Shown piece by piece: positions 1 through 47,907 of a DNA stretch of 64,000 bases. How positions within the stretch are numbered: the stretch's first letter is position 1; every line of letters begins with the position of its first letter. The DNA is taken from sequence record MK250021.1, one strand, 5' to 3'. The notes under the pieces are model-generated. The model ran no database searches and was not told the origin of the DNA. It saw only the letters and a program-made list of their open reading frames with translations. The position numbers and the translations under genes were made by a program.

Positions 1-3000
1 AGTATTTAAATTTTCTTTTGTTTCTATATTTGTAGAATAATTTTCATACTTATAATATGTGTTTAAATTAGCTGGTTTTTCAGTTACTATATTTATATTT
101 GAATTTGGTTCTGTGTCTTTTGCATAAAGTTCAACTTCAATATTTGACTATGCATTATAATATACTGATAATGTATGATTTATATAATTTTTCTAACCTG
201 TATATTGAGAATCTTTAAAATAATTCCAATTTTCATTAAATGATTCATTATTTATAAAATGATTAAATATTGCGGATGTTAAATTTATAGTTATAACTGT
301 ATTACCTTGATTAATATCAGAAATATTATATGAAGAATCTGAATAATTAACAGATAATATGTCATTCGCAGTAGGATAAACAAATTTATTAATTAATATA
401 TAATCATTATGAATAACCATACAGTGTGAACCTAAGAATGATTTATCATCAATTCCTGTTTTATGTCCATCAATACTTATATAATCATTTTCATTAAGAT
501 ATTTACGATAATAATTATTATCCCATGTCGCGCTTAATAATGAACGATTATCTACTAAATAATAATTTTTATTTAATCTCTATAAATTAGTGTCTTCAAA
601 TACTTTATTACCTGGATAATTCTGTATTCTATTAATATTTTTTATTTTTGTATTAGATTGCAATAAATCAACATTAAGAATATCTCGTAATTCATCATCT
701 ATATAAAAATCAACCATATTATTCGTATTAGGTGTAAACCATCCGTAATTAAATTTAATCTAATTAGGTATTGATAATGTAAATATTAATGGATTATATT
801 CTTCTGTATTATGTATTAATTTAACCTCTGCTTTTTCTGGGATAATATATATATCAATATCATTAGTAAATGTATCAACATATCGTTTTAACTTATCCTT
901 CGGTGTTTCTAATGATATTAATTTTGATATATACTTCTTAAAATGTGTTAAATTAGTTCCTGTTATCAATTTCGTGTTAGTTAATAAGTTTGTTTTATCA
1001 TTTTTATATGATATAATAAACTAATCACTATTAAGAATATTTGATAATTTTATATTGTTAACATTATTTACATTATTTTGTTTCTTTATAGTTAATCCTA
1101 ATTTATTTTCATTTAATGTTATTAATTTCGGATTTAATACATTTGTTATATTTAAATGCTAACTTATATTTTTTCCTATAGTTGTAGTACGTCTTATAAC
1201 ATTTTCAAGGATCTATTTAGCTGTATGATTATATTCACCATCTGCCTTTGTAATAATATACGCATGACTATTACTTGATATTGAATTTACATGAGTTAAT
1301 GTACCTGGATAATCAATATACTCATAATTTGTTAATACACCAATATCATTATAATTATTAACAGAAACATATTCATTACAATCAACTGAATTTTCCATAT
1401 TAAATGAAACAAACTATGGTGAATTAGTTGATAATGTTGTATTTACTATCGGTACATCATACTATGTAAATAATGAAGACCATAAATTATGTTCATCTAT
1501 TAATGACATTAATTGTTTATGAAAATTATTCTTCTTATGAGCATGAATACCATTATTCATACAGTTAAGTGTCCTGAAATCAATATCATATGGTGCGTTA
1601 AGAACTGCATAATCAGCATAACTCTAATATTCATTTGTTGTAACATTCTTTATGTTAGATGTGCCTTCATGTGCATAATCAATATAGAACTAATGATTAA
1701 TCAATAAGATGAACCTTTCTTTTAACGATATATAAATCTCATTAGTTTTTGATAAATCATAATCGGTTAAAACAAATGCTTCAAACCCTGAATAATCTTC
1801 AAGATGAATATAACTATTAACAACCTTTGTATTTAACTTAATATTAAATTTAATACCGGAAAATATAAACTCAAGACTTTTAATATTAGAATTATAATAT
1901 ACAGATGCTGTATCAATATTAGTATTATCTATCAATAATTTTTTAATGGAATGCTGTACAGAACCATTTAATATACTTTCCTTATATGTAATTGATTCAT
2001 TATTAATATACAATATATTATCTACTTTATTAGTTACATATTGATTTGTATCATAATCTGCTACATTATAAGTATTTTCACAGAAATTACCATTAAATTC
2101 ATAATTTTCATTTAATGTATTAACATCTAATATGTTATTATTATCATAATATTGTCCATTAGATTTCCATAAACATTGTACAGATGGAACAATAGGATAT
2201 AATAATTCACTATTACCTGTATTATTAGGATTTACAAAATAATTATTTGATTTTAATTCTGGAATTACAGTATCATAATTATATTCCTAATATTTTTGTT
2301 TGTCTGCTATTTTTAATTTAGTATTTTCTATAACAGATATTGAATTCAAATTATTTACGTTTATAGTTGTACTTATATATGCTGTTTTAGAAGGTGTTAT
2401 TATAAATGTCGTTCCTTTAGACACATTTACTTTATTGAATTTAAGTTTACCATCTAAAACTTCATACATCACTCCATGTTGTATTCTATAATCCGTTTCA
2501 TCTGTTGCAATAGTTTCACCTGCCGGAATATCAATATATAAATTATCCTCATTATGTAATGTTCTGCTTAAATCAATAGTTGTATCTATATCTTTAATAT
2601 TAGTAATACCCATTATAGCAACTGCGACTTCTGTAGGTTTATACAAATGAATCTTATTAGTTATTAATAACGAAGGATTAATAGTAGAAATCATGCATGT
2701 ATTTACATCATATGGATTTGTTATTACGCATAAATCCTATGTTTTATTAATAAACTACTATTGATTATCTAAACTATAATTCTTATAATTATCTGGTTCC
2801 CATACATTATTTCTCAAATATCCATTTGTAATATTAAATACATTAACTGTATCATAAATACCATTTGTGTTATAAATTAATGGATACTTAATTTTATTAA
2901 CTAAGTCACTAATATCTGTATTAACAGAATATGTATAATTAAGTTCTTTTGTTGATTTAAACTTAACAACATTATTGTAACGCCAACCTAATGTTTCAAA

Positions 3001-6000
3001 ACAATAATTGGAGAATGCACAATAATAATTATCAAAATAATCTGATTGATTTGTCAATGCATGCATTTCATAAGTTATATTACTATTAAAATATGAAATA
3101 GTATCATCTTTAATATTAACAGGATCTTCTGATTCAACATAACAATGTAAATCACTTATATTATTTAAATAATTATGTTCAGAATTATTATCTATATTCT
3201 TTATCCAATCATTTTCATTATCATCCGGTTGTATATCATTTTCAATATATTTAATACCATTATGTTTAATAAATGAAATACTGTTATTATATTCTTTATT
3301 TGTTGTATATAATGATGATACAAGACCATTTACTTTATCAAATCCAAAATAATCATAATGAAAATCATCAAACTTTGGTGCTAATATATGTTGAACATAC
3401 ATATTATCATATGATGAAATTATAGAAATACTCTTATCATTATAAGATCCAACTTTAATTATATTAGTATTAAATTTCTCAATACATTTTATAATACGAT
3501 TAATCTGTACATCTAATGTTGCAGTTATATCATTATATTCCAAATCCTATGAATAAAATGAAATTCTATAGAAATAAGTATTTTCAGAATATCTACATTT
3601 CTATTTGGCAACATATGGATTTATATTATAATCAGTCTCTAATAATCTATCATCATTTGATGCAATTATTTCATATACAATATGTTCAGTTGTAAACTTA
3701 TTTGTTTCATATGTATTACCAGCATTAGTAACAGAAGATTTAATAGGATAATCCTATGCAATAAATTTAATATGTTCACCACATTCAATAGGTTTATTGA
3801 AATGTAATATTATAAAACTTTTATCAGTATCTTTATCTATCTTAATTTCTGATGAATCTAATGACATTAAATTTGAGTCTGGAGTATTAGTGACATAATT
3901 CTTAAAGAAATTCTTTAAATCAATATCAGTCTAAACTCTACCTACATTATTATTTGTTATTGCGAAGAATAATCTATCATAATATTTCTTATCGAATATT
4001 ACTTTATAAATATTCTCATCTCCTTTATAAATATCACCATTTTCATCATATTTAGTTAATACTGTATTTCCTGTACTATTCTTAGAAGAAACAACATAAC
4101 CATAATTAATGAAATCATTTGCAGTTAAATATAATCCAAAATAACGATGCATAGAATATTCTTCCATATCATTATCATCAAACATAAACTCAAGGTTTAT
4201 AATATTGGAATATATAAGATTATGTCTTTCAAAGCCAGCAATAATATAATTATTAAACATTTCTTGTTTATTAGCTATATCTGAATTTAATATTTTAGAT
4301 CCAAAATATGTTGTCTCTGACTAATTAACAAGAATGCCTCTATCTACTGATATACCTTTCCATATATTATTGCCTTGTCTATAATAAGGAGAATTCTAAT
4401 TATAATCCTGTTCAATAAATTGCAAATAACATTGTCCATAATTAGACAACATATTCTTATAATTATTAAGATATTGTCCAATAGATGTTGTTGTTCTTAA
4501 ATCAAATGTCTTTATAACCTTTGATTCTTTAATTAATTTCTTTAATTTTTCTGTATCATTAATTCCTTCACCTGAATATGTCTCTTCATTAAATATATCG
4601 TCATATCTGAATATCGCGAAGAATTCTGGTACATTATTTCCTATATGTAATGGTGCGAGAATCTTCATATTTTCAGAATAAAGACTATCTGTATTTGTTT
4701 CTGCACCATATTCATACATTGTTTCATATTGATCTTTATAATCAGTATAAACCTTATGTGCTTTCAGAGAATTTTCTGGTAATCCAAATAAATTTTTAAT
4801 AGGAATTTTACTGAATACCTTTTTTATATCTCTTGGATAATTACCATCAGATGAAATAGGGTATTTACGAACATTCTTATTATTTAATACAGCATTAGCT
4901 TTAAATGTATCAAGATATAAGTTATAATCTTTATCTACAACTAATTTAATATTTCCAGATAACTTTGGATTTGCTCTTAATAACATTGATGAATGATGTT
5001 GTGTATTAAGTTCATAACCTTTATTATCATAATTTGTTAGATGCTTTTCATTTTCATCATTAGTAACTATTAATCGTCCGTTTATTTTATTGCTAGATTT
5101 ATCAGTAATAGTTAAAACAATATCTTCTGATGAGCTAATAGGATAATCATCATCTAAACTTATTGTAAATATACCAGGTTCTATCCTATTTTCAAATATA
5201 ATATTATTATCTGTTTTATTTATGAAATCATTAATATGAACACCATTAATTCTTAAATAATTTTTCAAAGCATTATTCTATAATGTTATAATATAATTTG
5301 AAGGAGTTTCTGTTTTTACACGAATATTACTTCCATATACAGATATTTTATTTATAACAGACTATGTATTAATATCAGATATTTTTTTATCTTTTAAAAC
5401 TATCATATCCGGTACTTGTTCTTTTAATTTATCCTAATCAATTATCAACTAATCTGTAATTTTGTCAACATATGAAATTTCTAAATTTGCTTCAATATCT
5501 GTTAAACTTTTATCGGATACTTCTTTTTCTGTATTTGTATAATCATATACATCTGTTAAATAAATATAATTTCCAGATAAAATAGGATATACACCATATC
5601 TAGGAATTTGTTTTGTTAAAGGATTCGCACATTCTTTTGTTTCAATACTATGTCCGTCTTCATCTATGTCTATTTCATAATTATATAATTTTTCATTATT
5701 GTTTATATCGTCATTACCAGTTGCTATTTCATACTTAGGTTTATCTTCATCCGTATTTATTAATACATAACGATGATATATAGCTCTATAAGAACTGTCT
5801 ATACAACTTATACTCTTTTCACCTAATGTTATTAATTTTGTGTTATCAGCTATATTACCATTATTAGGATAATCGTTATTATCTTGGACAGGTACACTAT
5901 AAATTATAGTATCTTTATTATTAATAGTAGTATCATTATACTTATTACATATACGATTACTAAAATTATACATTTCTTTATAATCATTGAAGAATTCGGT

Positions 6001-7263
6001 TTCATCCTAATCAAAAAACACGCTTGAATCAAATCGATTATATATTCTATATGAATTATTATGTGTACAAAAATTCTTGATTATAAAATCATTAATACTA
6101 AAGCTATAATTTTCAGCATTATTATGATATATTTTTATATTAGTTCTATATGTCTTAAAAGGCTCTTTATCATTATTAAACGTAAATGAGCCGTTAATAT
6201 TAAAAGTATAAAAATCATTCTATGCATCCTTATCAACTTTAGTCGTAATATTTCTATCTTTAATATAAGTATTATATACAGTAGGAGACCAGATAAAAAC
6301 AGGTTTATAATATATAAATTTTAATGGTACTGATTTTTGTTTATATCCTAAATAAGCATTCTAAGAAACAACACATTCTGTATATGCACTAACAGACAAT
6401 AATGATTTAGGATCTGTATATATTGCACTAATTTGAAACCTTAATACATTTCGGTCTTCCTATATAAAATTATCAGGTACATACAATAAATTTGTATGTG
6501 GTATTAATGTATTATTATCTGTATTATAATCAAATGCTGGTAATAATAATGTATTGTTATTAAGTTTATCATCTTTCCATTTTGGTAAAGTTATATCCTT
6601 AATTGCCTCTTGTAATTTCTGCTCTTCTATATTAATTTTATTATTATTATATAAAATTACGGGTTTAATAATTAATTTAAATGGAAAGTCACCTATATTT
6701 TTATCATATAAATTCCAATTAGTTAATGAATCATTAATATGTGATTTATTATCGCTCCAATATATTTTAACATTAATCTTATAATTTGCAACATAATGAT
6801 CATCAATATAACCTCCATTAAAATTTGAATTAAATGCACTTGGTAAATCATTACCAATATTTACAAATGTACCTTCATCATATGTAGAATCGTCAGAATG
6901 AAATAATAAATCACTAAATATATTATTTGCTATATTTTTATTAACATTAATATTATTTAATGGGAATATATTTCCATAAATTATTTTATTTGAATTTTTC
7001 TCTGAATTCTTTCCATAAAAAGGTAATTTATCAAATTTTGCTGTTAATTCCATTTTAACAGGATATGGTAAATCACTATTTATATTTTCTTTATCTTTAA
7101 ACTAAAACGAATCAGGGTCATATACATATCCTAATTTATCTGTATTCATGACAGGAATTGGATATTCTACATCTTCATACCCATTTATTAAAACAGATGA
7201 ATTAATAACAACATCTCTCTTATTTGGTGTTAACTTAAATAAATATTTCTTTTCTTTTGCCAT
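1..7263 (-). CDS. Giant hypothetical virion protein, >2421 aa, runs off window; code 15
   Basis: Ten track fragments share one frame and each ends at TAG; ATG at 7263 (MAKEKKYLF); the joins I translated had no TAA/TGA; open to base 1. Confidence 0.85.
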
Positions 7264-24037: not shown

Positions 24038-24074
24038 AATCTGTTACCTAAGTTTTAGGTAACAGATTTTTTTA
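24038..24074 (+). terminator. Intrinsic terminator
   Basis: 14-bp stem aatctgttacctaa/ttaggtaacagatt plus T run. Confidence 0.8.
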
Positions 24075-24090
24075 TTTAAAATATTTGATG

Positions 24091-24098
24091 TATCTTTG
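24091..24098 (+). promoter_or_regulatory. Bacteroidota sigmaA -7 element
   Basis: TATCTTTG before 24138. Confidence 0.7.
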
Positions 24099-24137
24099 TA
24101 ATATAATAAATAAGTTAGATAATTAAAAAATAAAATT

Positions 24138-27787: not shown

Positions 27788-28912
27788 ATGCCTAAGAAAG
27801 TTTAGTTTGAAGAATTTGAGTAGAGATTAAAAAATAAATTTGGTGATAAGTTTAAATATATTGATTTAAGTTTAATAGATAAAGAAAACTTTAATTATTT
27901 AGATAAGTATCCTATTAAATGTTTAATACATAATAAAATAGCATATAAAGAGCCGAAAATCTTTTTAAGATCTACAACATTAAATATATGTAGTAAATGT
28001 CAAAGGGAATAGCAAGTTCGTGATTCACATAAAATGCATGAAGGTAAAGAAAGACATTATACATCAGTTGATGAATTTCTAGAGCGTTTATATTAGAAAT
28101 ATAAAGATAAAATAACTATTGATAAAAATGATATTTTATTAAATAAAAATGGTTCAGTAAATTTTTCATAGAAAATGAAATTTATATGTCAAAAACATGG
28201 TGAATTTTATTGTAAACCATCCGATATATTTCGTTCAACTCATGGATGCTCAAAATGTGCTAATGAATATATGAAATTAAAAAATATTCAATATGGTGAA
28301 GAACGAAGATAGTCATTTATAAATGATGCTATTAAAATTCATGGTAATCAATATGATTATTCAAAGGTTGATATAACAGGTAAACTAAAAAAAGTTGAAA
28401 TTATATGTAAAGATCACGGTTCATTTTTTATGATGCCATCTTTACATTTAAGAGGTGAAGGTTGTAAACTTTGTAATAAAACAAATTTATTAAATTGTGA
28501 ACGACGTTTATATCAAATATTAATTGATAATTTTCCTAATGAAGAAATTATTAAATAGTATCATAACTTTTTAGGAAGACAAAGTTTAGATTTTTATTTT
28601 CCTAAATATAAAATAGGAATAGAATATCAAGGTAAGCAACATTTTGTTACTAGTGAATATTTACATAATGACACAAGGCATTCATTAAAACATTAGAAAG
28701 AACTTGATGAAAAGAAGTTCAATAAATGTAAAGAACATAATGTTACACTTTTATATTTTACATTTGATAAATAGTATGAAAATATTGAATATTACTCAAA
28801 ACTATATGTAAATATAAAAGACTTAATTGAAAAAATACAATATATAATAAATAATTACAATGTTTGCGTTAATAGTAATACAGACATTGAGCAACAAAAA
28901 TTAAATACATAA
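27788..28912 (+). CDS. Putative Vsr-like homing endonuclease with Zn-ribbon repeats, 374 aa; code 15
   Basis: CQKHGEF..GCSKC, CKDHGSF..GCKLC, SLDFYFPKYKIGIEYQGKQHF; several TAG; absent from track. Confidence 0.8.
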
Positions 28913-28918: not shown

Positions 28919-29512
28919 ATGAGCAACAAAAAAGTAGTTGGAATTGATTTAGGTACTGGAAACAGTGCGGTAGCCATCATTGAGAATGGCGTAGCTAAAG
29001 TAATTGAAAATGCAGATGGTTATAAGACAACTCCATCTGTTGTGTACATCAAGGGTGATGAAACAAAAATTGGTGCAGCCGCAAAACGTGGTATGGTAAT
29101 GAATCCAAAGAATACCATTTCATTTGTAAAGCGTTTTATGGGTGCTAAATGGGATGATCCTGATGTACAGAAGATGTTAAAGATGGTAACATATGATGTT
29201 ATCGATGAAAATGGAAATCCTCGTCTTAAGATTGACGATAAAACATATTCACCAGAGCAAATTTCATCTATGATTCTTAAGAATATGTATGAAGTTGCAA
29301 AGGGATTCTATGGAACAGAAGATTGTAAAGACGCTGTTATTACTGTTCCTGCATGGTTTAATGATATTCAGCGTAATGCTACAAAGGTAGCAGGTCAGTT
29401 GGCTGGTTTGAATGTTCTTCGTATTATTAATGAGCCAACTGCAGCAGTTCTTTCTTCAAATATTGATACAAAATCAGGAGACAAGATTGTTCTTGTTAAT
29501 GACCTCGGTTGT
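28919..29512 (+). CDS. dnaK: DnaK (Hsp70) exon 1
   Basis: GIDLGTGNS, TTPSVV, VITVPAWF, LRIINEPTAA, ends VNDLGC. Confidence 0.95.
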
Positions 29513-29860
29513 AAACATTCTGTTACTGCATCCGCGCTTGCTGCTTAATCACTAAAGCAAGTGTAAAGTTAAAAACCCGTTAATTGCTGAGAGTCCCACG
29601 TTAGATATATACTAATGATAAAAATGGTCTTAAATACCGCTATTAGATGGTGACATACTAATTAGCACCAACTTTAATGTGTTGGGTATGGTAAAAAGTT
29701 TAAGAATTGGGTGACCGCCGTAAATCTTAAAATATATTAAGATAGAGCATCCAAGTATCTTGGTAACAAGATAAAGGTTCAACGACTAGAAAAAGTAATC
29801 CTATTAATTTAGGAAGAAATTTCCACGAATGCGGGTTAGTTTGGAAGTGGTACAAGTGAT

Positions 29861-29894
29861 ATAAGATAAATATTAAAAAGAATGTTTATCTTAT
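29861..29894 (+). promoter_or_regulatory. Hairpin covering the intron ORF start
   Basis: ataagataaatatt/aatgtttatcttat stem, TAAATA in 5' arm, ATG 29893. Confidence 0.55.
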
Positions 29895-30963
29895 GATTAA
29901 TACAGAGTTCTTTGATTTATTGATTAAACATATACTTAAATTATATGATGAAAATAATAATGAAATTAAATTTAATGAAATAACATATAAATTTGAAAAA
30001 CGAAAATTTTCATCAGTTACAAGTTTAGTTATATATGTAGATAATATATCACTAACATAGAAATAGTATCGTTCATATTTTATATTATATAAATGTAGAT
30101 GTGGTCGAGAACATAAAATATTATTACAAAAATATTTCTTAAAAAAGAAATTACATTGTATTAATTGCTGTTAGGATAGAAGTTTTGATGATTATGTAAT
30201 AGCGTATTATAAAGGTAAAATTAAAGAAAATAAACAAATAATATTAAAAGAATTTGATGAATATGATGATTAGTTTAAAGAAAATTATAAAAGAAATCAT
30301 TTATCAAATGAAGAATTTAAAAAATATTTACCTTATATTTATAAAATTAATAATCATTTAATAACAGAAGATATATTAAATAATATAGTATATTATTATA
30401 CAGAACATGTTAATAATCAATTTAAATTTACTGTTAATATTTCTTTTGATAATGGTATTACAAAAGAACCTATAAAATAGTTATATTTAAAATGTAATAC
30501 ATGTGGACGTATATTTAAAATACATACAAATAATATAAGATTACAAGATTTATCAAATATTCAATGTAGAAAATGTAAATTAGTAAATACTACATATCCT
30601 ATTAAAAAATATAAAAATACTAATATAACATATTAGTCAGGAATTGAAAAAGAATTTATTGATTTTTGCTTTTCTAATAATATTGAAATTGAAAATGGTA
30701 AAGAAATTATTTATGAATTTGATAATAAAGTAAGAACATATATAACAGATTTTTATTTACCATAGTTTAAATATATTATAGAACTTAAAGCTAAAAATAA
30801 GTTTTATAGAGATGATTTAAAATCTGGTAAAATTGAAGCAAAAAATAAGGTATGTATTGATTATTGTAATAAAAATAATTTAGAATTTAAGTTTGTGTTT
30901 GATTATGAATTAAATGAATTTAATCAATAGCTTCTAAATGAAAGAGATAGTCTTGAGGAATGA
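29893..30963 (+). CDS. Intron-encoded PD-(D/E)xK-type homing endonuclease, 356 aa; code 15
   Basis: CRCG, CNTCG, CRKC; YQSGIE...RTYITDFYLP...IELK; about 8 TAG; reads through S element to TGA. Confidence 0.8.
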
Positions 30964-31013
30964 AAGTTCCTCGGTAAGATAAAGAGCTTACAAAGTTAAA
31001 TAGAAACAAATAG

Positions 31014-32384
31014 GGTACAGAGGATGTTTCTATTGTTGAGATTTCTGATGGTATGATTGAGGTTCTTGCATCTGATGGTGATGTGTTCCTTGGCGGTCAG
31101 AATTATGATAATGCCATTGTTCAGTGGCTTATCGATGAGTTTAAGAAAGATACAGGTATTGATTTGAGTAAGGATAAGATGGCATATGCACGTCTTGTAG
31201 AGGCAGCAGAGAAAGCAAAGTGTGAGTTGTCAACTACTACTCAGACAGAGATTAACCTTCCTTATATTACTGTATCTGATGGTGTTCCTCAGATGTTGAT
31301 TAAGACTCTTAATCGCGCTACATTTGAGAGACTTACAGAAGATCTTACAAATAAGGTTGTAGAGATTGCACATCGTGCTGTAGAGAAGGCAGGTATTACA
31401 GAGGATCAGATTAGTGAGATTCTTCTTGTTGGCGGCTCTTCACGTATTCCTTCAGTTCAGGATGCATTGGAGAAGTCATTTAACAAACCTTTGAATAAGA
31501 CCTGTAATTTTGATGAGGCTGTTGCACTTGGTGCTGCTATTCAGGCAAATACACTTGCAGGTAATGCAACAGAGGATTCAGTACTTCTTTTGGATGTTAC
31601 ACCAATTTCACTTGGTATTGAGGTAAATGGTTGTGAGATGGCTAAGTTGATTGAAGCTAATACAACTATTCCTACACGTAAGTCACAGACATTTACAACT
31701 GCAGTAGATAATCAACCAGCTGTAACTATTAAGGTACTTCAGGGTGAACGTCCAATGTCCGCTGATAATAAGGTAATTGGTACATTTAATTTGGAGGGTA
31801 TTGCACCAGCTCCTAAGGGTGTTCCTCAGATTGAAGTAACATTTGATATTAATGCGGATGGTATTCTTGAAGTAACTGCAAAGGATAAGGGTACAAATAA
31901 GGAACAGAAGGTAACAATTCAGTCTCCTAACGCACTTTCTGATGAAGAGATTGCACGTATTAAGGCAGATGCTGAGAAGTTTGCAGAAGCAGATAAGAAG
32001 AAGAAAGAGGAAGTTGATAAGTTGAATACTGCAGAACAATATGCAACACAGGTTCAGAAGTATATTGATGATGAGAAAACAGGTGCATCTGTTCCATCTG
32101 ATAAGAAAGAAACATTGAAGACAAAGATTACTGCAGTTCTTGATGCAGTTTCTAAGAAGGATGTATCAGCAGCAGAGACTGCACGTGCAGATCTTGAAAC
32201 TGTATTTAAACCTATTGTTGAGGAAATGTATAAGAATGCAGGTGGTGCAACAGCAGGTCAACCTCAGAATGAATCACAGGGAAATCCATTTGCTAATGCA
32301 GGATTTGGTGATGCAAATGCTTCAACTTCTGATACTAAGGCAGATGATGACGTTCAAGAGGCAGATTTTGAGGAAGTAAAGTAA
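31014..32384 (+). CDS. dnaK: DnaK exon 2 (spliced product 654 aa)
   Basis: GTEDVS, LGGQNYD, LLVGGSSRIP, LLLDVTPISLG, GVPQIEVTFDI. Confidence 0.95.
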   Translation, partial: GTEDVSIVEISDGMIEVLASDGDVFLGGQNYDNAIVQWLIDEFKKDTGIDLSKDKMAYARLVEAAEKAKCELSTTTQTEINLPYITVSDGVPQMLIKTLNRATFERLTEDLTNKVVEIAHRAVEKAGITEDQISEILLVGGSSRIPSVQDALEKSFNKPLNKTCNFDEAVALGAAIQANTLAGNATEDSVLLLDVTPISLGIEVNGCEMAKLIEANTTIPTRKSQTFTTAVDNQPAVTIKVLQGERPMSADNKVIGTFNLEGIAPAPKGVPQIEVTFDINADGILEVTAKDKGTNKEQKVTIQSPNALSDEEIARIKADAEKFAEADKKKKEEVDKLNTAEQYATQVQKYIDDEKTGASVPSDKKETLKTKITAVLDAVSKKDVSAAETARADLETVFKPIVEEMYKNAGGATAGQPQNESQGNPFANAGFGDANASTSDTKADDDVQEADFEEVK

Positions 32385-32568: not shown

Positions 32569-33657
32569 ATGACAAAAGACTTGTATGATATATTAGGTAT
32601 TGAGAAAGGTTGTAATGATCAGAAAAAGATTAAAACTGCATTTAGACAACTTTCTAAGAAATACCATCCAGATATGCAGAGAGGAAAATCAGATGCAGAG
32701 GTAAAGGAAGCTGAGGAAAAGTTTAAGGATGTTAACCATGCATATGAAGTTTTGAGTGATCCTCAAAAGAAAGAGAATTATGATAATTTTGGTGATGAAA
32801 ATGGAAGACCAAATCCATTTGGTGGTTCCGGTGGTTTTAATCCATTTGGTGGTGATTTTGATCCATTTGGAGGATTTAATCCATTTGGAGGATTTGGTGG
32901 AAGTTCACGTCAGAAGAAAAATCAGGTTCAACCAGGTAGGGATATTCAGATGAAGATTCCTGTATCTATTGAAGATATATTTAAGGGAGTTAAGAAGAGT
33001 GTTAAATTTAAGAGAAACGTAAGGTGTTCTGTATGTCATGGTGCAGGTGGAACTGGTCAGAAGACATGTCCAAAGTGTCATGGAACTGGTAGAATTATTC
33101 ATCAGCAGCAATTTGCAATGGGGTCATTCTCTATTCATGAAGAAGTTTGTCCATTGTGTCATGGAACTGGTTTTTATGTAGAGAACAAATGTGATAAGTG
33201 TGGTGGTTCTGGATTTGATAAGAAAGAAGTAAAACTTGATATTGAATTACCATCTGGAGTACAGAATGGAGAATATCGTGTATATAGTGGTGAAGGATCC
33301 GAATCAAAGAATATTTCAGGACCTAATGGTAATTTTATCGCTATTGCAGATTATACGTTTGATACAGATAGGTATCAGGTTGATGGGTTGAATGTAGTTG
33401 AACATATTCATGTCCCTTATTATAAATTGTTGCTTGGCTGTTCATATACTCTTAATATTCCTTCTGGTGTAAGTAAGGTTGTTAAGTTGAAGAGTTGTAT
33501 TAAGGAAGGAACAATTATGAGATTAACCGGCGAAGGACTTAAGAGGTCTGATGGCCAAAAGGGTGATTACTTCATTTGTGTTCATTATCAATTTCCAGAA
33601 GACCTTAGTGCGAATGATAGAGCATTGCTTGAAGTTATAGAGAAAAACAATAAATAA
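32569..33657 (+). CDS. dnaJ: DnaJ
   Basis: J domain with HPD, G/F region, four CxxCxGxG repeats. Confidence 0.95.
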   Translation: MTKDLYDILGIEKGCNDQKKIKTAFRQLSKKYHPDMQRGKSDAEVKEAEEKFKDVNHAYEVLSDPQKKENYDNFGDENGRPNPFGGSGGFNPFGGDFDPFGGFNPFGGFGGSSRQKKNQVQPGRDIQMKIPVSIEDIFKGVKKSVKFKRNVRCSVCHGAGGTGQKTCPKCHGTGRIIHQQQFAMGSFSIHEEVCPLCHGTGFYVENKCDKCGGSGFDKKEVKLDIELPSGVQNGEYRVYSGEGSESKNISGPNGNFIAIADYTFDTDRYQVDGLNVVEHIHVPYYKLLLGCSYTLNIPSGVSKVVKLKSCIKEGTIMRLTGEGLKRSDGQKGDYFICVHYQFPEDLSANDRALLEVIEKNNK

Positions 33658-33723
33658 TATTTATTAAAACAATTTAGCTATTTTTATATATAAATAAAAA
33701 TAGCTATTTTTATTTTGTAAACC

Positions 33724-34110
33724 ATGGAAGATTTTAGTAAAGTAGAAGGTATTAAGACTAAAGGTGGAAAACCTTATGTGTAGAATAAAGAACTTATGAA
33801 AGAGATTGTACTTTCAAAGTAGAGAGATGAACTTACATATAACGCTGTTGTTATGCTTTAGTTAATTGCCGAAAATTTAGCAAAGAAAAAACATTATAAA
33901 TGTCAAGAGGATAAAGAAGATTGCATACAAACAGCAATGATGGATGTTGCCATGTATTGGAGAAGCTTTGACCCTGAGAGATTTAATAATCCATTTGCTT
34001 ATTATACAAGTATGTTATGTAATGGATTATCAAAAGGATGGAATAAGATATATGGTAAATTTAAAGCATCTGAGATGACAAGTCTTGACAACAATATACA
34101 TTCATTTTAA
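33724..34110 (+). CDS. T4 gp55-like late sigma factor, 128 aa; code 15
   Basis: YVQNKEL, ELT..A..MLQLIAENL, KEDCIQTA, SFDPERFNNPFAYYT; three TAG; absent from track. Confidence 0.8.
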
Positions 34111-34129: not shown

Positions 34130-34663
34130 ATGCCTGCATATGATAGTTATATTGCAGAACATGGAACTGCAATAAGTGATTTAACATTGAAGAAAATGTT
34201 AGTTAATAAAAAAGATATTTAGGATAAAATTAATAATACATTTGCATATGAAGATACGCCAGCTGTAATTCCTGGTAAATCTATTGATGATACAATAGAT
34301 AAACAATTAGATTCTTTGAATGAAGATACTGGTATGAATTCATTGATTACACAAGCAGCAATGATGAAAGCAAAAAGCGAGACTGATAAAAAAGAAGATT
34401 TAAAACAAAAAACAGAGCGACGTAAGAATTTCATTGAATCTATGATGTATCAGCAAGGTGAACTTTATTATCAACAACATCATTATTTTATGGATGGTAA
34501 GACAAAACGTAGAGTTCGTAAAGCAGTTGAACGTGCATATGATAAAGGTAAGTATAATAAGAGCGGAATTTATTTTGAACAACCACAAACAAAGACTATT
34601 ATTAGAAAACCAAAGAATACTAATAAGGAACCAGTAAATATGCAAGATATGTTAAAGATGTAA
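34130..34663 (+). CDS. Hypothetical protein, 177 aa; code 15
   Basis: ATG 34130, one TAG, in frame with track ORF 34316. Confidence 0.75.
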
Positions 34664-38298: not shown

Positions 38299-38805
38299 AT
38301 GGATCGTGGTGAACGACGTTATCGTCAAAAGAAAAAGTGGATTTCTCGTTTAAAGAAATTATGGAATTCACATGTATTTTGGAATTATATTTCTCCTGTA
38401 AAGAAAAAGAAACCAAAATGTATTAGAGAAATGAAAGAACATAGAGCTACATCATGGCAAGATTTTACGAAGGATCATTTTGGTGTATTAGTTAAAAATA
38501 CAGGAACTGTTATGACTGATAATAAACGTTTGGATATTACAGAAGAACATAAGAGAAAAATGCAAAACAGAAAACTTACAAAGGAAGATCAAGAAGAAGT
38601 TGATGAATATCTTGATAGAAAAGAACATCCATATAGGTTTGAAGATTTTTGTTGTAATTGTGATAATTTTCCTGGAGATAGATTATATGAATCTAGAGAA
38701 TACGATGGTAAAGATGTTTGTCCATTTGTAGAAAGATTTAAATCTGGTGAATTAAATGGAGATACAGAATGGCAGAAGTTAGGATGTGAAAGTTTTATTG
38801 ATTAA
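38299..38805 (+). CDS. Hypothetical protein
   Basis: Track ORF; C-terminal CCNC...CPF...C. Confidence 0.8.
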   Translation: MDRGERRYRQKKKWISRLKKLWNSHVFWNYISPVKKKKPKCIREMKEHRATSWQDFTKDHFGVLVKNTGTVMTDNKRLDITEEHKRKMQNRKLTKEDQEEVDEYLDRKEHPYRFEDFCCNCDNFPGDRLYESREYDGKDVCPFVERFKSGELNGDTEWQKLGCESFID

Positions 38806-38903
38806 TTAAATATTATTATAGGTGATTAGCAAATTATAGTTAATCACCTATAACTTTTTATATATTTTCTTATATAATCTTTAACTAATAATATTTTTAA
38901 TTT

Positions 38904-40625
38904 ATGACAATGATGAAAACAGATATTGAAATTTCGCAGAGTGCACAACTTCAAAGTATTGATTATGTATTTGAAAAACTTGTTCCTTATGATGATCGTA
39001 TAAAAAATGGATATATTGAGCAGTACGGTAATTATATGGGTAAAATTCCATTGACATATTTAAAATCAGGAATGGAATGTGCAAATAAACATCTTATTCT
39101 TGTAACTTCAATTAGTCCTACTAAATCTGGTATTGGTAAGACAACTGTAAGTGTAGGATTGAATGATGCACTTAAGAAATTAAAGAAAAATTCCATTGCG
39201 GTATTGAGAGAACCTTCTCTTGGACCATGTTTTGGTATGAAAGGAGGCGCATGTGGAGGTGGTTATTCACAAGTAGTACCAATGGATAAGATTAATCTTC
39301 ATTTCACGGGAGATTTTCATGCAATTACAACAGCAAATAATATGATTGCTTCTGCAATCGATAATTATTTCTATCATAATCCAGAAAAAGAATTAGATAT
39401 AAAGAAAATTACATTTAGACGCTGTTTAGATATTAATGATAGGTCTCTTAGAACTATTTACACAACACAGCGATATGGAAAACTTATTCAAACAGGATTT
39501 GATATTACGCCAGCATCAGAAATGATGGCAATTTTTTGCATGGCATATGATATAGATGATTTACGTAAACGTATTGATAAAATTATCATTGCAGAGCGAG
39601 AAGATGGTAGTTTTATGTATTGTAAAGAATTAGGAATAACCGGTTCAATTGTTGCATTGTTATCAGATGCGATTAAACCTAATTTAGTACAGAGTCTTTA
39701 TAATAATCCTGTTATTATTCATGGTGGTCCATTCGCTAATATTGCACATGGTTGTAATTCAGTTATCGCAACACGTATGGGATTGTCATTATGCGATTAT
39801 GTTGTAACAGAAGCAGGATTCGGTTCAGACCTTGGTGCTGAAAAATTCATTGATATTAAATGTAGAACTGCAGGTTTTTCACCAGATGTTATTGTATTGG
39901 TTGTGGCTATTCCAGGTTTGAAAAATCAAGGTGGTTGTAAAGATATAACAAAGGAAGATACAAGATCACTTGAGATAGGACTCAAGAACCTTGATCAACA
40001 TTTGAATGCACTTAATACATTTGGTTATAAGATTATTGTCACTAATAATGTATATGATACAGATACGCGAAATGAACAGATAATTCTTGAGAATTTCTGT
40101 AAGAGTAGAAAGGTAAAGTGTATTAAGAATACATGCTATGTAGATGGTAGAGATGGAGCATTAAATTTAGCACAAGAAGTTATTGATACCATTGATAATA
40201 CGAAGCATATAGCATTTCCAAATTGGGCATATCAAAAATATGATAATATAAAAGATAAGATTTCAGATCTTTGTGAAAATATTTATGGTATAAATTCAGA
40301 TAATATACGTTATTCATATAAGGCTGAAAAGTTTATTGAGAAATATGATAAGACATATGAGAATTATAAGGATGAATTAATTCAGGAAATTAGTGAATAT
40401 CCTATTTGTATGGCAAAGACACAATATTCATTTTCAGATAATCCATCAGTATTGCCAGTGCCAACACATGATACTACATTTACTATTGATGAAATTAAAA
40501 TTAATAGAGGTGCTGGATTTTTAGTTGTTATTGCAGGTAATATGATGCGAATGCCTGGTTTACCAAAAGAACCAGCAGCAAAGAAAATAGATTATGTTGA
40601 TGGAAAAATTACAGGATTGAATTAA
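38904..40625 (+). CDS. fhs: Formate-tetrahydrofolate ligase
   Basis: SPTKSGIGKTT, LREPSLGP, KGGACGGGYSQV, HGGPFANIAHG, TEAGFGSDLGAEKF, MPGLPKEPAA. Confidence 0.97.
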   Translation: MTMMKTDIEISQSAQLQSIDYVFEKLVPYDDRIKNGYIEQYGNYMGKIPLTYLKSGMECANKHLILVTSISPTKSGIGKTTVSVGLNDALKKLKKNSIAVLREPSLGPCFGMKGGACGGGYSQVVPMDKINLHFTGDFHAITTANNMIASAIDNYFYHNPEKELDIKKITFRRCLDINDRSLRTIYTTQRYGKLIQTGFDITPASEMMAIFCMAYDIDDLRKRIDKIIIAEREDGSFMYCKELGITGSIVALLSDAIKPNLVQSLYNNPVIIHGGPFANIAHGCNSVIATRMGLSLCDYVVTEAGFGSDLGAEKFIDIKCRTAGFSPDVIVLVVAIPGLKNQGGCKDITKEDTRSLEIGLKNLDQHLNALNTFGYKIIVTNNVYDTDTRNEQIILENFCKSRKVKCIKNTCYVDGRDGALNLAQEVIDTIDNTKHIAFPNWAYQKYDNIKDKISDLCENIYGINSDNIRYSYKAEKFIEKYDKTYENYKDELIQEISEYPICMAKTQYSFSDNPSVLPVPTHDTTFTIDEIKINRGAGFLVVIAGNMMRMPGLPKEPAAKKIDYVDGKITGLN

Positions 40626-42201: not shown

Positions 42202-42344
42202 TTTTAGACTTTATTAATATAATTATATATAAAATACATAACGAATGTTAATTATAAGTTAAGTTATTTTAATTATTAAAATTAAAATTAAAAATATTTT
42301 AGACTTTTTTAACATTCTTATGTAAAATATACATAAGATTTTAA

Positions 42345-42761: not shown

Positions 42762-43523
42762 ATGTCTAAAGATGATTTAGTAAATATACAAGAACAACCA
42801 GGAATTTATATGATTTAGAATGATATAAATAAAAAATGTTATATAGGCTAGAGTATAAATTTACATACAAGATTGTTACATCATATAAATAATTCTATAA
42901 ATAATCGTTATAATGCACCAATATATAGAGCATTTAAAAAATATGGTATAGAAAATTTTTCTGTATATATTTTAAAAAAATTTGATAATCCTATAACTAC
43001 ATATATTAAAGAATAGTTAGATATTTATGAGAAGAAATATATTAATGAATATAATAGTTATGGAAGCACGGGATATAATCAAACAAAAGGTGGTGATGGA
43101 GGTATAGATGGATATAAATTTACTAAAGAACAAAAATTAACAATTTCTAAAAATTCGTATAAAATATAGAATGATGGTAGAAATACAATATATTGTTATG
43201 ATATAAAAAATAATAAATTTATTGAATCAACATCATTATAGGAATTAAAACGATAGTTAAATGTTAATTTTAGAACAGGATGTATTAGAAATTTATTAAT
43301 ATATAATCAATATATTTTATCACGTTCAAAAGATGATTTATTATAGAAAATTAATAAGTATAATAATAAATTATAGGAGTATAATACAAATGGTTGTAGT
43401 AAATTAACTCATGAAATGAAAGATGATATAATTAATAATATATCAGAAAAAGAATTTCTTAGTAAATATAATGTATGTAAATCTACATATTATCATTATA
43501 AAGAAAAATTAAATATATCTTAA
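42762..43523 (+). CDS. GIY-YIG homing endonuclease, 253 aa; code 15
   Basis: PGIYMIQN..KCYIGQS..R, KYGIENF, EKKYI, GYNQTKGG; about 8 TAG; absent from track. Confidence 0.9.
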
Positions 43524-43546: not shown

Positions 43547-43618
43547 TGGGGATTAGTATAGTGGTCAGTACAGAGGTCTCTAAAACCTTTAGGCCGAGTT
43601 CGAGTCTCGGATCCCCAA
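43547..43618 (+). tRNA. Amber suppressor tRNA (anticodon CTA), Gln-type
   Basis: TGGGGAT/ATCCCCA acceptor, loop ctCTAaa (43580-82), T arm ccgag-ttcgagt-ctcgg. Confidence 0.95.
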
Positions 43619-43660
43619 CAATTAAATGACATAAGTAATATTTTAAAGATTTGATGAATT

Positions 43661-43945
43661 ATGAAGCAGAAGACAATTATTAAGACAGAATATTACGCAG
43701 ATGATGGTAGAGTATTTAATAATGAGAATGATTGTAAGTTATATGAGGATAAAGTGAAAATTCCAAAGATTGGATTATACTCGGTTATTGATAAGTATGA
43801 CGCTAAATCAGTTGTTAATTATATAGATTTGATTTTAGGACAATATAATGTTATTGGAGATTCATATATTAGAGATACTAAAATTAAAAATATGTTAACA
43901 CATCTTCAAAAACAATTTTCTAGTTATTTACCGGATGAAAAGTAA
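43661..43945 (+). CDS. Hypothetical protein
   Basis: Track ORF. Confidence 0.75.
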   Translation: MKQKTIIKTEYYADDGRVFNNENDCKLYEDKVKIPKIGLYSVIDKYDAKSVVNYIDLILGQYNVIGDSYIRDTKIKNMLTHLQKQFSSYLPDEK

Positions 43946-46020: not shown

Positions 46021-47907
46021 ATGCCAACTAAATTTATAGCAAGAAAGTTTAATCCAGGGAAAGCAGATCATAATAAAATAAATACACTTATTAATCTGTC
46101 TTCACTTAGTTTAAATTCAGCATAGAGTATTCTTAAAACTTCATTGGCTTTAGGTTCTACTCAAACAAGTAATTATTCTGGTGATTCATTAACACCGTTT
46201 AATGATATTTTAAATCAAGATTAGAATAAGTTTACATAGTATGCAGATATTACTAAAAATACAAGTTAGTCTTATGCATACTATGATTTGTCATATCAAT
46301 AGAGAAGAGAATAGTTAAGGTAGTTTGCTTCACAACAAACTATTTCATTTGTTTTAGATACTATTGCAGATGAATCTATTATATTGGATGAAAATAATTA
46401 TTTTGCATAGTTAGATTTAAATCTTCTTAAATTAAAACTTAATACTAATTATAAAGGTGCAAATGGAGAAACTGCAGATGATTTAATAAAGAATTGTCAG
46501 AAAGCATTTAAGATTATATATTCAACATATGGATGGGATAAATCTAATGATGCATGGAATTATTTTAAGAAATTTCTTATAGAAGGTTATCTTGCATTTG
46601 AGATTGTTGTTGATAATCTTATGAAACCTACAAGAATCATAGGTATGAGGGAATTGGATCCTGCTACATTGGAACCAGATATTGAAATTGATCCAATGAC
46701 AAATAAAGAAGTAAAGGTTTGGTATCAATATAAAGGTGACGCATAGTTAGAAAGGAAAATTCCAGATTCTAATATTGTATATATATCATGGTCAACAGGT
46801 ATGTATGGAGAGTAGTCACGTGTATCATATCTAGAAGGTTTAATAAGATCATATACAATGTTAACATAGTTGGAGACTTCTCGTATGGTATGGAATATCA
46901 TGAATGCATAGAAAAGAGTTAAAGTTGGTATTCCTGTTGGTAATATTTCTTAGGATAAAGCTCGTGCACGCGTAAATGAAGTTAAAGCAGATTGGAATGA
47001 AGAAACAACAGTTGATGAAATATCAGGTGAGATGGTAGTAAATGGACAACCACGATTCTCTTTTTCAAAGACACATTTCTTCCCTGTACGTGATGGTAAT
47101 TCAATGACTATAGAAGAAATCCCTACAGAAGGATATGATTTAAGTGATATTACTCCATTGAAATATTTCTGGAGGCGTTTCATATTAGAAACTAAAATAC
47201 CCGCTAATAGATTTATGATTGACCCTGCAGCTGAAGGTGCACATCCATTAGGTGGTGATGATGCAAGTATAACACGAGAGGAATATGCGTTTGGACGTTT
47301 TATTAGTCGTGTTAGAAATATATATCGTGAAATTTTGTTAAAACCATTATGGGTACAAATATGTTTAATGATGCCAGAGTTAGCAAGTTCTGAATTATTG
47401 AAACAATGTATAGGTATTGTTTTTAATGAAGAAAATATGTTTGTTAAAGCAAAAGAAAGAACTGCGTTAAAACAAGGCGCGGAAATTATAGGTACATTAG
47501 CATAGATTCAATTAGGTGAGAATAAACCATTCTTTAGTATGAAATTCTTAATTGAGAAATTCTTAGGTATGTCTGATGAAGATTTTGCACTTAATGAGAA
47601 ATATAAACAAGGTGAAATTATAGAGCGCTTAGAACAAGCTAAAACTATTAAACAACATCAAGAAATGGGTAAACAAGTTGGTGAACAACAAGGTAATGGA
47701 ACTCCTGGTGAAATGGATTTCGGCGGAGGTTCTGATGCAGGTGGCGGAAGTTCATTTGACGATTCATTTGGAGGCGGTTCTGATGCAGGCGGTGATTTTT
47801 CTGGAGGTGATGAAGTATTCTCTGGTGGCGACACTGGTATGGGATCCGGTGGTTCTGAAATTGCAGATACTGGTGGAGGTGATGAAGGCGGAGGTGACTT
47901 CGCTTAA
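46021..47907 (+). CDS. Portal protein (T4 gp20-like), 628 aa; code 15
   Basis: IADESI, FLIEGYLAFEI, ELDPATL, SYLEGL, KYFWRR, ITREEYAFGRFI; Gly/Asp-rich tail; many TAG. Confidence 0.88.

What the first reader, a model, noticed from the sequence alone, without database searches (positions are those of the whole stretch)
33724..34110. gp55-like late sigma factor gated by three amber codons
This ORF is invisible in code 11. It has TAG at codons 20, 33 and 46 (33781, 33820, 33859) and the T4 gp55 signature (YV.NKE; FDPE..NPFAY.T). The adjacent dnaJ and the dnaK exons have no TAG. Inference: amber suppression acts as a master switch, because no late transcription would occur until tRNA-CUA outcompetes host RF1. 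This goes beyond the reported pattern of recoded structural and lysis genes. A TATAAATA at 33689 inside a hairpin may add positive feedback.
Basis: partly seen in the sequence, partly recalled or inferred. Interest (0 to 1): 0.85.

Follow-up and report, generated by a model that had tools for sequence, protein, structure and literature searches.

The report
Amber-recoded late sigma factor, Lak megaphage
A giant gut phage writes its T4-like late-gene sigma factor with three reassigned stop codons, and its genes fall into two classes that differ in both promoter type and genetic code, so late transcription probably cannot begin until the phage has switched the cell's code.

Summary
Window 33724-34110 (+) is a 128-codon frame with TAG at codons 20, 33 and 46. 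The window matches Prevotella megaphage Lak-B2 exactly, a phage known to read TAG as Gln. The product is a real homologue of the T4 late sigma gp55 (profile E 2.6e-11; AF2 model pLDDT 91; best PDB fold match 7d7c_F). It is the only gp55-type gene in the genome.

New here: the genes form two classes.
- TAG-free genes carry a Bacteroidetes-type promoter (T-run, then TGTATCTTTG).
- TAG-containing genes carry a T4-late-like (A/T)ATAAATA about 35 nt upstream of the start codon, with no -35 element (86/206 vs 31/355, p 6.5e-20).

The sigma gene belongs to the second class, so its synthesis needs the phage tRNA-CUA (43547-43619). Late transcription is therefore probably downstream of the code switch.

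Two cautions apply:
- Its TAG load is ordinary for that class (78th-79th percentile), and TAG positions differ between recoded lineages.
- The TATAAATA lies in a hairpin that is conserved in Lak-A/C, but the motif itself is not, so positive feedback is not a conserved feature.

The "master switch" reading is plausible but not shown; no expression data were available.

The parts
33724..34110 (+). Gene for a 128-aa gp55-family late sigma factor (sigma region 2 only), read with TAG=Gln
   Evidence: PHROG 234 'late sigma transcription factor' E 4e-11. Family profile against PDB hits T4 gp55 7d7c_F at E 2.6e-11. AF2 model pLDDT 90.9. Foldseek top hit 7d7c_F, TM 0.66, rmsd 1.6 A. Only gp55-type gene in Lak-B2.
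33781..33783 (+). In-frame TAG, codon 20
   Evidence: Kept in all Lak-A/B/C copies. Also TAG in the 63%-identical relative L031.
33820..33822 (+). In-frame TAG, codon 33
   Evidence: Relatives have E, G or A at this position.
33859..33861 (+). In-frame TAG, codon 46
   Evidence: Relatives L031 and L032 have a standard Gln codon here, which fits TAG=Gln.
33675..33717 (+). 13-bp hairpin (33675-33687 / 33694-33706, loop 33688-33693) followed by a T-run: terminator-like element between dnaJ and the sigma gene
   Evidence: RNA fold -14.3 kcal/mol, z -4.9, 0 of 200 shuffles as good. The stem is kept in Lak-A1/C1 through compensatory changes at three pairs.
33689..33696 (+). TATAAATA (core ATAAATA 33690-33696), 34 nt upstream of the start codon: candidate late promoter of the sigma gene in the Lak-B clade
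   Evidence: It sits at the modal distance of the genome-wide late motif. It is absent from the same place in Lak-A1/C1, so its function is uncertain.
43547..43619 (+). tRNA with anticodon CUA, the only amber suppressor tRNA in the genome. Its acceptor stem (U1-A72, G2-C71, G3-C70) matches the phage's two tRNA-Gln
   Evidence: It lies in a run of TAG-free genes (38299-42755, 43661-44210) that ends at a terminator-like hairpin at 44218-44248; another lies at 38816-38853 inside the run.
42762..43523 (+). GIY-YIG homing endonuclease gene with 8 TAGs, directly upstream of the tRNA-CUA
   Evidence: PHROG 314/7168/5123.
28919..29548 (+). dnaK part 1 (HSP70 profile positions 1-195), TAG-free
29893..30963 (+). 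Endonuclease-like ORF with 8 TAGs inside the gap that splits dnaK; ATAAATA at -27
   Evidence: No Rfam intron match in 29400-31200.
31053..32384 (+). dnaK part 2 (HSP70 profile positions 210-599), TAG-free
32569..33657 (+). dnaJ, TAG-free
   Evidence: Pfam DnaJ, DnaJ_CXXCXGXG and DnaJ_C.
24063..24102 (+). Nearest upstream early-type promoter on the + strand (T-run, then TGTATCTTTG; -7 box starts at 24091). It may drive the unit that runs through dnaK and dnaJ to the hairpin
   Evidence: PWM score 37.9; 59 such sites in the genome and 0 in shuffled sequence.
34130..34663 (+). 177-aa gene of unknown function (1 TAG). It follows the gp55-like gene in distant relatives too
   Evidence: blastp to the downstream neighbours in L037 (E 7e-26), L036 (8e-9) and L033 (1e-6). 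No Pfam, PHROG or PDB match. Model pLDDT 64.
46021..47907 (+). T4-type portal gene: an example of a late-class gene, with 14 TAGs and ATAAATA at -38
   Evidence: Pfam Portal_T4 E 1.6e-59; motif position.

Best explanation
The ORF encodes the phage's only gp55-type late sigma factor, a sigma region-2 protein that should direct the host RNA polymerase core to -10-only promoters. The Lak-B2 genome has two gene classes. Early genes are TAG-free and sit behind Bacteroidetes sigma-A-type promoters (T-run, then TGTATCTTTG, matching TAnnTTTG). The second class uses TAG as a Gln codon and sits behind a T4-late-like (A/T)ATAAATA element about 35 nt upstream of the start codon. The sigma gene belongs to the second class. 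With RF1 active, translation would stop after 19 residues, so sigma is made only once the phage tRNA-CUA suppresses TAG. Its yield scales roughly with the cube of suppression efficiency. Late genes are then gated twice by the same input: suppressor -> sigma -> transcription, and suppressor -> translation of the late mRNAs. This is a coherent feed-forward loop. Sigma mRNA probably arises first by read-through of the conserved hairpin from the dnaK-dnaJ unit. In Lak-B it may also come from a late-type promoter inside that hairpin. The three TAGs look like ordinary late-class codon usage rather than a purpose-built device.

Shown: the TAGs, homology and fold, the single copy, the suppressor tRNA, and the promoter/code association.
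Inferred: that this protein reads ATAAATA, the order of events, the read-through, and any rate-limiting role of suppression.
For: Homology and fold:
- PHROG 234 E 4e-11; family profile to T4 gp55 E 2.6e-11; AF2 pLDDT 90.9; best PDB fold match is gp55 in the late open complex, TM 0.66, rmsd 1.6 A, followed by sigma region-2 domains.
- One gp55-type gene in the genome. No RNAP beta-prime domain was found, so the host core is the likely enzyme.

Frame is translated:
- 30 synonymous against 2 non-synonymous codon changes between Lak clades.

Two classes of genes:
- 355 TAG-free genes against 122 expected if TAG use were uniform.
- ATAAATA at -50..-18 in 86/206 TAG-containing genes against 31/355 TAG-free genes, p 6.5e-20. 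It is the top-ranked of all 21 seven-mers of the same composition; only the overlapping AATAAAT comes near.
- The motif is strand-specific: the reverse complement occurs in 8/206.
- No -35 information; A-rich at +10 to +12. This matches the T4 late promoter as reviewed in PMC2988020, where A at -13 occurs at 9 of 50 sites and there is no -35 conservation.
- The early promoter PWM gives 59 hits and 0 in shuffled sequence. The exact core TATCTTTG occurs upstream of genes 46 times, 44 of them before TAG-free genes.
- Carrying promoter class along co-directional gene runs: TAG-containing genes are 158/268 in late units against 19/190 in early units (p 2e-28); 11.7 against 1.6 TAG per 1000 codons.
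- Portal and terminase are TAG-rich. RF2 and one sigma-70-type gene are TAG-free and lie in early units.

Relatives:
- The same pairing of motif and code appears in a distant recoded relative, L033.
- Recoded relatives also carry TAG in this gene, at other positions.
Against: - No expression or protein data were available; no RNA runs hold this sequence.
- 56 of 132 TAG-containing genes with an upstream gap of at least 40 nt lack the motif, and 25 of 184 TAG-free genes have it.
- Gene calls are my own ORF-based approximation.
- Two sigma-70-family genes exist and could read some of these promoters.
- No gp45 clamp or gp44 clamp-loader match was found with Pfam models.
- The promoter of the tRNA-CUA could not be assigned.
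- The ATAAATA in front of the sigma gene is missing in Lak-A/C.
Confidence: 0.7

Rival explanations
1. Dedicated master switch. Selection keeps TAG codons in the sigma gene so that the rise of amber suppression over RF1 is the rate-limiting trigger that times all late transcription.
For: The dependency itself follows from the sequence. Three TAGs in the first 46 codons give a steep, roughly cubic response to suppression efficiency (inference). All four recoded lineages examined carry TAG in this gene: Lak A/B/C, L031, L032 and L033/34. If the sigma mRNA is made early by read-through from the TAG-free dnaK-dnaJ unit, TAG would be the only barrier to premature sigma.
Against: TAG share (3 of 5 Gln-like codons) and TAG density are at the 79th and 78th percentile of TAG-containing genes, so not outliers. 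Positions turn over between lineages and sit at variable residues. Within Lak, retention of all three TAGs is expected by chance about 44% of the time, given that 24% of codons carry synonymous changes (my estimate). Other sigma factors exist. Timing is unknown.
Confidence: 0.3
2. The TAGs have no regulatory effect. Suppression is on from the start of infection (or RF1 is disabled at once), timing is purely transcriptional, and TAGs simply accumulate by AT-biased drift in genes that are never translated before the switch.
For: The tRNA-CUA lies among TAG-free genes, which suggests early or constitutive expression. Proteins with 30 TAGs (the 2443-aa gene at -68..7263) need near-complete suppression, so TAG acts as a plain sense codon late in infection (inference). 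TAG positions turn over between lineages.
Against: Early-unit genes avoid TAG strongly: 1.6 against 11.7 per 1000 codons, and 125 TAG-free genes of at least 200 aa against 18 expected. This implies a phase in which TAG is still read as stop.
Confidence: 0.2
3. The ATAAATA promoters are read by another factor (one of the two phage sigma-70-family proteins or a host factor), and this small protein has a different role at RNA polymerase.
For: Two sigma-70-type genes are present. No gp45 or gp44 partner was detected. No biochemical data exist.
Against: The motif is the T4 late consensus core, has no -35 element, and is strand- and position-specific. That is what a sigma lacking region 4 would use. 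The best structural match is gp55 bound to exactly such a promoter.
Confidence: 0.1
4. The ORF is a dead gene and the TAGs are true stops.
For: It is invisible under table 11.
Against: 30 synonymous against 2 non-synonymous changes across the whole frame. Homology to gp55 spans all three TAGs. 206 other genes, including portal and terminase, share the feature. TAG=Gln in Lak phages is published (PMC6784885, PMC8346664).
Confidence: 0.01

Closest known systems
T4 gp55 late sigma factor and its TATAAATA promoters (PDB 7d7c/7d7d; review PMC2988020)
   Same: Homologous sequence and sigma region-2 fold. Small size with no region 4. A cognate-looking -10-only element, (A/T)ATAAATA, with an A-rich stretch downstream and no -35 element, placed before structural genes such as a T4-type portal. 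A short conserved C-terminal tail after a low-confidence linker (...SLDNNIHSF here, ...SLDFLYEAND in T4).
   Different: 128 aa against 185 aa. No gp45 clamp or gp44 loader was detected with Pfam models, and gp33 was not searched. The host is a Bacteroidetes bacterium whose own promoters are TAnnTTTG. The gene itself needs a reassigned stop codon to be translated. The classic T4 gene 55 amber mutants mimic this only artificially.
Stop-codon recoding as a regulator of late and lytic genes in code-15 phages (Borges et al. preprint 10.1101/2021.08.26.457843; Devoto et al. PMC6784885)
   Same: Same phage group. TAG=Gln, tRNA-CUA and RF2. TAG-free regions against TAG-rich structural regions. TAG-rich homing endonucleases.
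   Different: Those papers describe recoding of structural, lysis and (in Lak) replication genes as post-transcriptional control. They do not mention a recoded sigma factor or two promoter classes that follow the two codes. Here the code difference is coupled to a transcriptional class, and the class's own sigma lies inside it.
Phage sigma cascades (for example Bacillus phage SPO1 gp28 then gp33/34; from my own knowledge)
   Same: Successive sigma factors reprogram the host polymerase. An early-expressed phage sigma-70-type gene exists here as well.
   Different: In the known cascades each step is controlled at transcription. Here the last sigma also needs a change in decoding.

Membership tests
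T4 gp55-type late sigma factor | Sequence homology to gp55 | tested here: met
   PHROG 234 E 4e-11. Single sequence against PDB: gp55 is the only hit, E 0.014. A 92-sequence profile gives gp55 at E 2.6e-11, and the next hit is at 0.13.
T4 gp55-type late sigma factor | Sigma region-2 fold, closest to gp55 | tested here: met
   AF2 pLDDT 90.9. Foldseek rank 1 is 7d7c_F (probability 1.00, TM 0.66, rmsd 1.6 A over 97 columns); the following ranks are sigma-E, sigma-S and sigma-32 region 2. The Foldseek E-value of 7.5e-3 is modest.
T4 gp55-type late sigma factor | No sigma region 3 or 4 (no -35 reader) | tested here: met
   128 aa; four helices plus a small N-terminal hairpin. Pfam finds only Sigma70_r2, below its cut-off.
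T4 gp55-type late sigma factor | Cognate -10-only TATAAATA-type promoters upstream of late genes | tested here: met
   In silico only. ATAAATA at -50..-18 in 86/206 against 31/355 genes, p 6.5e-20. It is strand-specific, has no -35 information, and is found before the portal gene. No transcript starts were mapped.
T4 gp55-type late sigma factor | C-terminal hydrophobic/acidic sliding-clamp-binding epitope | tested here: inconclusive
   The tail ...TSLDNNIHSF recurs in close family members (SLDNNIHSI-like) and shares SLD with T4 ...SLDFLYEAND. It is not acidic, and no other Lak protein with a clearly matching tail was found.
T4 gp55-type late sigma factor | Partner sliding clamp (gp45), clamp loader and co-activator gp33 in the same genome | tested here: not met
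   Pfam DNA_PPF, gp45-slide_C and Gp44_lid give no match in Lak-B2. gp33 was not searched. Divergent clamps could escape these models, so this lowers 'works exactly like T4', not 'is a gp55 homologue'.
T4 gp55-type late sigma factor | Binds the RNAP core and directs initiation | not testable with these tools
   Needs biochemistry.
Code-15 (TAG=Gln) recoded phage gene | In-frame TAG inside a conserved, selected frame | tested here: met
Code-15 (TAG=Gln) recoded phage gene | Genome encodes a tRNA-CUA suppressor and an RF2 | tested here: met
   tRNA-CUA at 43547-43619, the only one in the genome. RF2-like gene at Lak-B2 292737-293873, TAG-free.
Code-15 (TAG=Gln) recoded phage gene | TAG stands where relatives have Gln | tested here: inconclusive
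   Codon 46 aligns with a standard Gln codon in L031, L032 and L008. Codons 20 and 33 are at variable positions (K/N/D/S/T and E/G/A). The general assignment rests on PMC6784885 and PMC8346664, and on the Gln-like acceptor stem of the tRNA.
Code-15 (TAG=Gln) recoded phage gene | Temporal switch of decoding during infection | not testable with these tools
   No RNA runs and no cultured system.

The most novel reading that the evidence does not exclude
The code switch sits above the whole late programme. A single gp55-type sigma, translated only through three amber codons, turns rising suppressor activity into a steep (roughly cubic) on-switch for every ATAAATA promoter. The same suppressor is then needed again to translate those mRNAs. 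This would be an AND-gated feed-forward loop in which a change of genetic code, not a transcription factor, is the master developmental signal of a virus.
Probability: 0.3. Interest if true: 0.8.

Novelty: new variant of a known kind. Interest (0 to 1): 0.62.

Why it matters
Stop-codon recoding in gut phages has been proposed to delay translation of lysis and structural genes. These results add two things.
- The recoded gene set has its own promoter type, so code and transcription class are coupled across a 550-kb genome.
- The sigma factor that most likely reads that promoter is itself recoded.

This places the code switch upstream of late transcription, not merely alongside it. It also gives a small, testable circuit of four parts: one tRNA, one 128-aa sigma, one 7-8 bp promoter and the host polymerase core. 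The circuit could be rebuilt in a Bacteroides or Prevotella laboratory strain even though no Lak phage is cultured. The two motifs also give a practical way to sort Lak genes into early and late sets without expression data.

Tried and rejected
I fetched Lak-B2 (MK250021) in eleven pieces instead. It equals the window outside the N run.
- The operator-masked stretch (window 12765-13140): I overwrote it with N in my copy before any analysis and never read or printed it.
- The search for related loci with alignments A1 and A2: failed for lack of a conserved stretch. The single-protein scan found only near-identical Lak copies and three distant high-GC phages.
- RNA evidence: no RNA run holds the region.
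- gp45 clamp and gp44 loader Pfam models: no match.
- RNAP beta-prime domain: no match.
- A third, 'middle' promoter motif for TAG-free genes lacking the early motif, including the block that holds the tRNA-CUA: no convincing k-mer. GTATAAT was only weakly enriched. The site before 38904 looks like a degenerate early promoter by eye only.
- Group I intron in the dnaK gap: no Rfam match even at E up to 1.
- Downstream partner gene: no family or PDB match, and the model was too poor to search with.
- Clamp-binding-like C-terminal tails across the Lak proteome: nothing convincing.
- Huge-phage orthologues L003-L007: no TAG in the sigma gene, but those loci show no local sign of recoding, so they are uninformative.
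- The journal version of Borges et al. is not in the library. I used the preprint.

Full report
**1. What is there**

The frame 33724-34110 on the + strand runs for 128 codons. It has TAG at codons 20, 33 and 46 (33781, 33820, 33859) and ends with TAA. The window is 25.6% GC, so a frame free of TAA and TGA for this length is not a chance event.

The window is identical to Prevotella phage Lak-B2 (MK250021) positions 372001-436000 outside a masked N run. Lak phages are published as code-15 phages that read TAG as Gln, with a tRNA-CUA and an RF2 (PMC6784885; PMC8346664). The window holds the only tRNA-CUA of the genome, at 43547-43619. Its acceptor stem (U1-A72, G2-C71, G3-C70) is shared with the phage's two tRNA-Gln and not with its other tRNAs.

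**2. What the protein is**

- PHROGs gives 'late sigma transcription factor', E 4e-11. Pfam gives only Sigma70_r2, below its cut-off.
- HMMER over 1.8 billion representative proteins found 822 relatives, mostly 110-140 aa.
- A profile of 92 of them hits T4 gp55 (7d7c_F) at E 2.6e-11. The next hit is at 0.13.
- An AlphaFold2 model has pLDDT 90.9. Its best PDB match is gp55 in the gp55-dependent open promoter complex (TM 0.66, rmsd 1.6 A), followed by region-2 domains of other sigma factors.
- Lak-B2 has only this one gp55-type gene and no detectable RNAP beta-prime domain. It also has two sigma-70-family genes. One is TAG-free and lies second in a unit behind an early promoter.

Between Lak-B and Lak-A1/C1 the gene shows 30 synonymous against 2 non-synonymous codon changes, on both sides of the TAGs. 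It is therefore translated through them and is under purifying selection.

**3. The surroundings**

Upstream lie a TAG-free dnaK and a TAG-free dnaJ. The dnaK is split in two (HSP70 profile positions 1-195 and 210-599) by about 1.5 kb that carries a TAG-rich endonuclease-like ORF.

Between dnaJ and the sigma gene is a 13-bp hairpin followed by a T-run (33675-33717; -14.3 kcal/mol, z -4.9).

Downstream is a 177-aa gene of unknown function. It follows the gp55-like gene in distant relatives as well.

**4. Genome-wide test**

I made my own ORF-based gene calls on Lak-B2 with TAG read as sense. This gave 561 genes.

- 206 genes (57% of codons) contain TAG. The 355 TAG-free genes far exceed the 122 expected if TAG use were uniform. 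For genes of at least 200 aa, the figures are 125 against 18.
- De novo k-mer comparison of upstream regions gave two motifs.
- TAG-free genes carry a T-run followed by TGTATCTTTG. This matches the Bacteroidetes -7 consensus TAnnTTTG (from my own knowledge). A PWM finds 59 sites in the genome and 0 in shuffled sequence. The exact core TATCTTTG occurs upstream of genes 46 times, 44 of them before TAG-free genes.
- TAG-containing genes carry ATAAATA, peaking 30-40 nt upstream of the start codon: 86/206 against 31/355, p 6.5e-20. It ranks first among all 21 seven-mers of the same composition; only the overlapping AATAAAT comes near. The reverse complement occurs in only 8/206.
- The extended consensus is (A 64% / T 19% / G 16%)-ATAAATA-NNN-a-A-A, with no information where a -35 element would be.
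- This matches the T4 late promoter as reviewed by Geiduschek and Kassavetis: an 8-bp TATA-box element, A at -13 in 9 of 50 sites, AT-rich downstream, and no -35 conservation (PMC2988020).
- Carrying the promoter class along co-directional gene runs gives 158/268 TAG-containing genes in late units against 19/190 in early units (p 2e-28), and 11.7 against 1.6 TAG per 1000 codons.
- The T4-type portal (14 TAGs, motif at -38) and the terminase are in the late class. RF2 and one sigma-70-type gene are in the early class.
- An 11-kb contig of a distant recoded relative (sigma 52% identical) shows the same pairing on a small scale.

**5. Where the sigma gene falls**

It is in the late class by code. 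In Lak-B it is also in the late class by motif, with ATAAATA at -34, the modal position.

Its TAG load is ordinary for that class. Three of its 5 Gln-like codons are TAG, the 79th percentile, against a class-wide share of 41%. Its TAG density is at the 78th percentile. The median first TAG in such genes is at codon 22.

In recoded relatives the gene also carries TAG, but at other places. L031 has TAG at codon 20 and codon 36. L032 has one in an N-terminal extension. L033/34 have them near codons 27 and 88. Standard-code relatives have none. The three Lak positions are variable residues in the family. Within Lak, retention of all three TAGs is not significant given the level of synonymous change (my estimate is about 0.44).

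**6. The hairpin and the feedback idea**

In Lak-A1 and Lak-C1 the hairpin is kept through compensatory changes at three pairs. The loop and upper stem differ, however, and ATAAATA is absent there. The conserved element is therefore the terminator-like hairpin, not the promoter motif. Autoregulation is possible in the Lak-B clade but is not a conserved part of the circuit.

The nearest early promoter upstream on the same strand is at 24091. Read-through of the hairpin from the dnaK-dnaJ unit is a simple source of the first sigma mRNA. In that case the TAGs would be the only barrier to premature sigma. This is inference.

**7. The suppressor's own expression**

The tRNA-CUA lies in a run of TAG-free genes (38299-42755 and 43661-44210) that ends at a terminator-like hairpin at 44218-44248; another such hairpin lies at 38816-38853, inside the run. 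A TAG-rich GIY-YIG homing endonuclease is inserted just upstream of the tRNA.

About 1,570 codons in that block have no TAG, where about 18 would be expected at late-class density. This argues that the block is expressed before or independently of the switch. However, I found neither a consensus early nor a late promoter for it. No RNA run holds this region.

**8. Mechanism and verdict**

The most likely picture has four steps.
- Host sigma-A transcribes the TAG-free genes, including RF2, a sigma-70-type factor and probably the tRNA-CUA block.
- Once TAG is read as Gln, the gp55-type sigma is made.
- That sigma directs the host core to ATAAATA promoters.
- The resulting mRNAs again need the suppressor to be translated.

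Proteins with 20-30 TAGs imply near-complete suppression late in infection (inference).

The causal chain is strengthened by the link between promoter class and code. Three parts are not supported or not testable here: the idea that the TAGs are a purpose-built master switch, the positive feedback, and the competition with RF1.

No paper in the library mentions a recoded sigma factor or promoter classes that follow the code. The journal version of Borges et al. was not available.

**9. Limits**

- Gene calls are approximate, and some N-terminal extensions may add spurious TAGs.
- Promoter assignments are motif-based.
- The association was measured in one genome, with a small check in one relative.
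- Lak clades are too close to each other to count as independent.

Noticed in passing
window 28919-32384: The phage dnaK (HSP70) is split into two ORFs by about 1.5 kb that carries an endonuclease-like ORF with 8 TAGs (29893-30963) and its own ATAAATA at -27. No Rfam intron model matches the gap, so how the two parts are joined is unknown. Two more TAG-bearing endonuclease genes (26735-27745, 27788-28912) lie just upstream.
   Followed up: partly
window 45475-45884 (+): Rfam tmRNA match (RF00023, 47.3 bits, right at the gathering score of 47, E 1.3e-15) just upstream of the portal gene. ARAGORN did not call it.
   Followed up: no
window 34130-34663 (+): A 177-aa protein of unknown function (1 TAG) follows the gp55-like gene here and in distant relatives (L037 E 7e-26, L036, L033). 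It has a conserved basic core (MDGKxKRR). It could be a co-factor of the sigma, but there is no family, PDB or confident fold match.
   Followed up: partly
window 42762-43523 (+): A GIY-YIG homing endonuclease with 8 TAGs sits inside an otherwise TAG-free gene run, 24 nt upstream of the tRNA-CUA. Three TATAAATA copies lie inside it (42824, 42884, 42896) and could in principle drive late transcription of the tRNA.
   Followed up: no
window 44218-44276 and other early promoters (19152, 20704, 24091, 48690, 51139, 54996, 55572): The early promoters are nearly identical copies (T-run, about 13 nt, TGTATCTTTGTAT). At 44218-44276 the T-run that follows a terminator hairpin doubles as the upstream promoter element. 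The tRNA array at 52015-54917 lies downstream of the early promoter at 51139.
   Followed up: partly
window 54303-54417 (+): Rfam calls a 115-nt tRNA that ARAGORN missed, probably an intron-containing tRNA of the kind reported for Lak phages (PMC6784885).
   Followed up: no
Lak-B2 record 346127-346199 (outside the window): A tRNA with anticodon UUA (it would read TAA) although TAA is used as a stop throughout. This is already reported as universal in Lak genomes (PMC8346664).
   Followed up: no
Lak-B2 record 510655-522836 (outside the window): The family-B DNA polymerase matches fall in three separate ORFs spread over 12 kb on the minus strand, with few or no TAGs. Here the polymerase looks split and largely standard-coded, although the preprint says Lak replication genes are mostly in the alternative code.
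   Followed up: no
whole Lak-B2 genome: TAG codons are more frequent in the first tenth of TAG-containing genes (196, against 112-161 in the other tenths). This may be real 5' bias or an artefact of over-extended start codons in my gene calls.
   Followed up: no
window 12765-13140: A run of 376 N (masked by the operators). I left it alone, and blanked the matching stretch of the Lak-B2 copy before any analysis.
   Followed up: no
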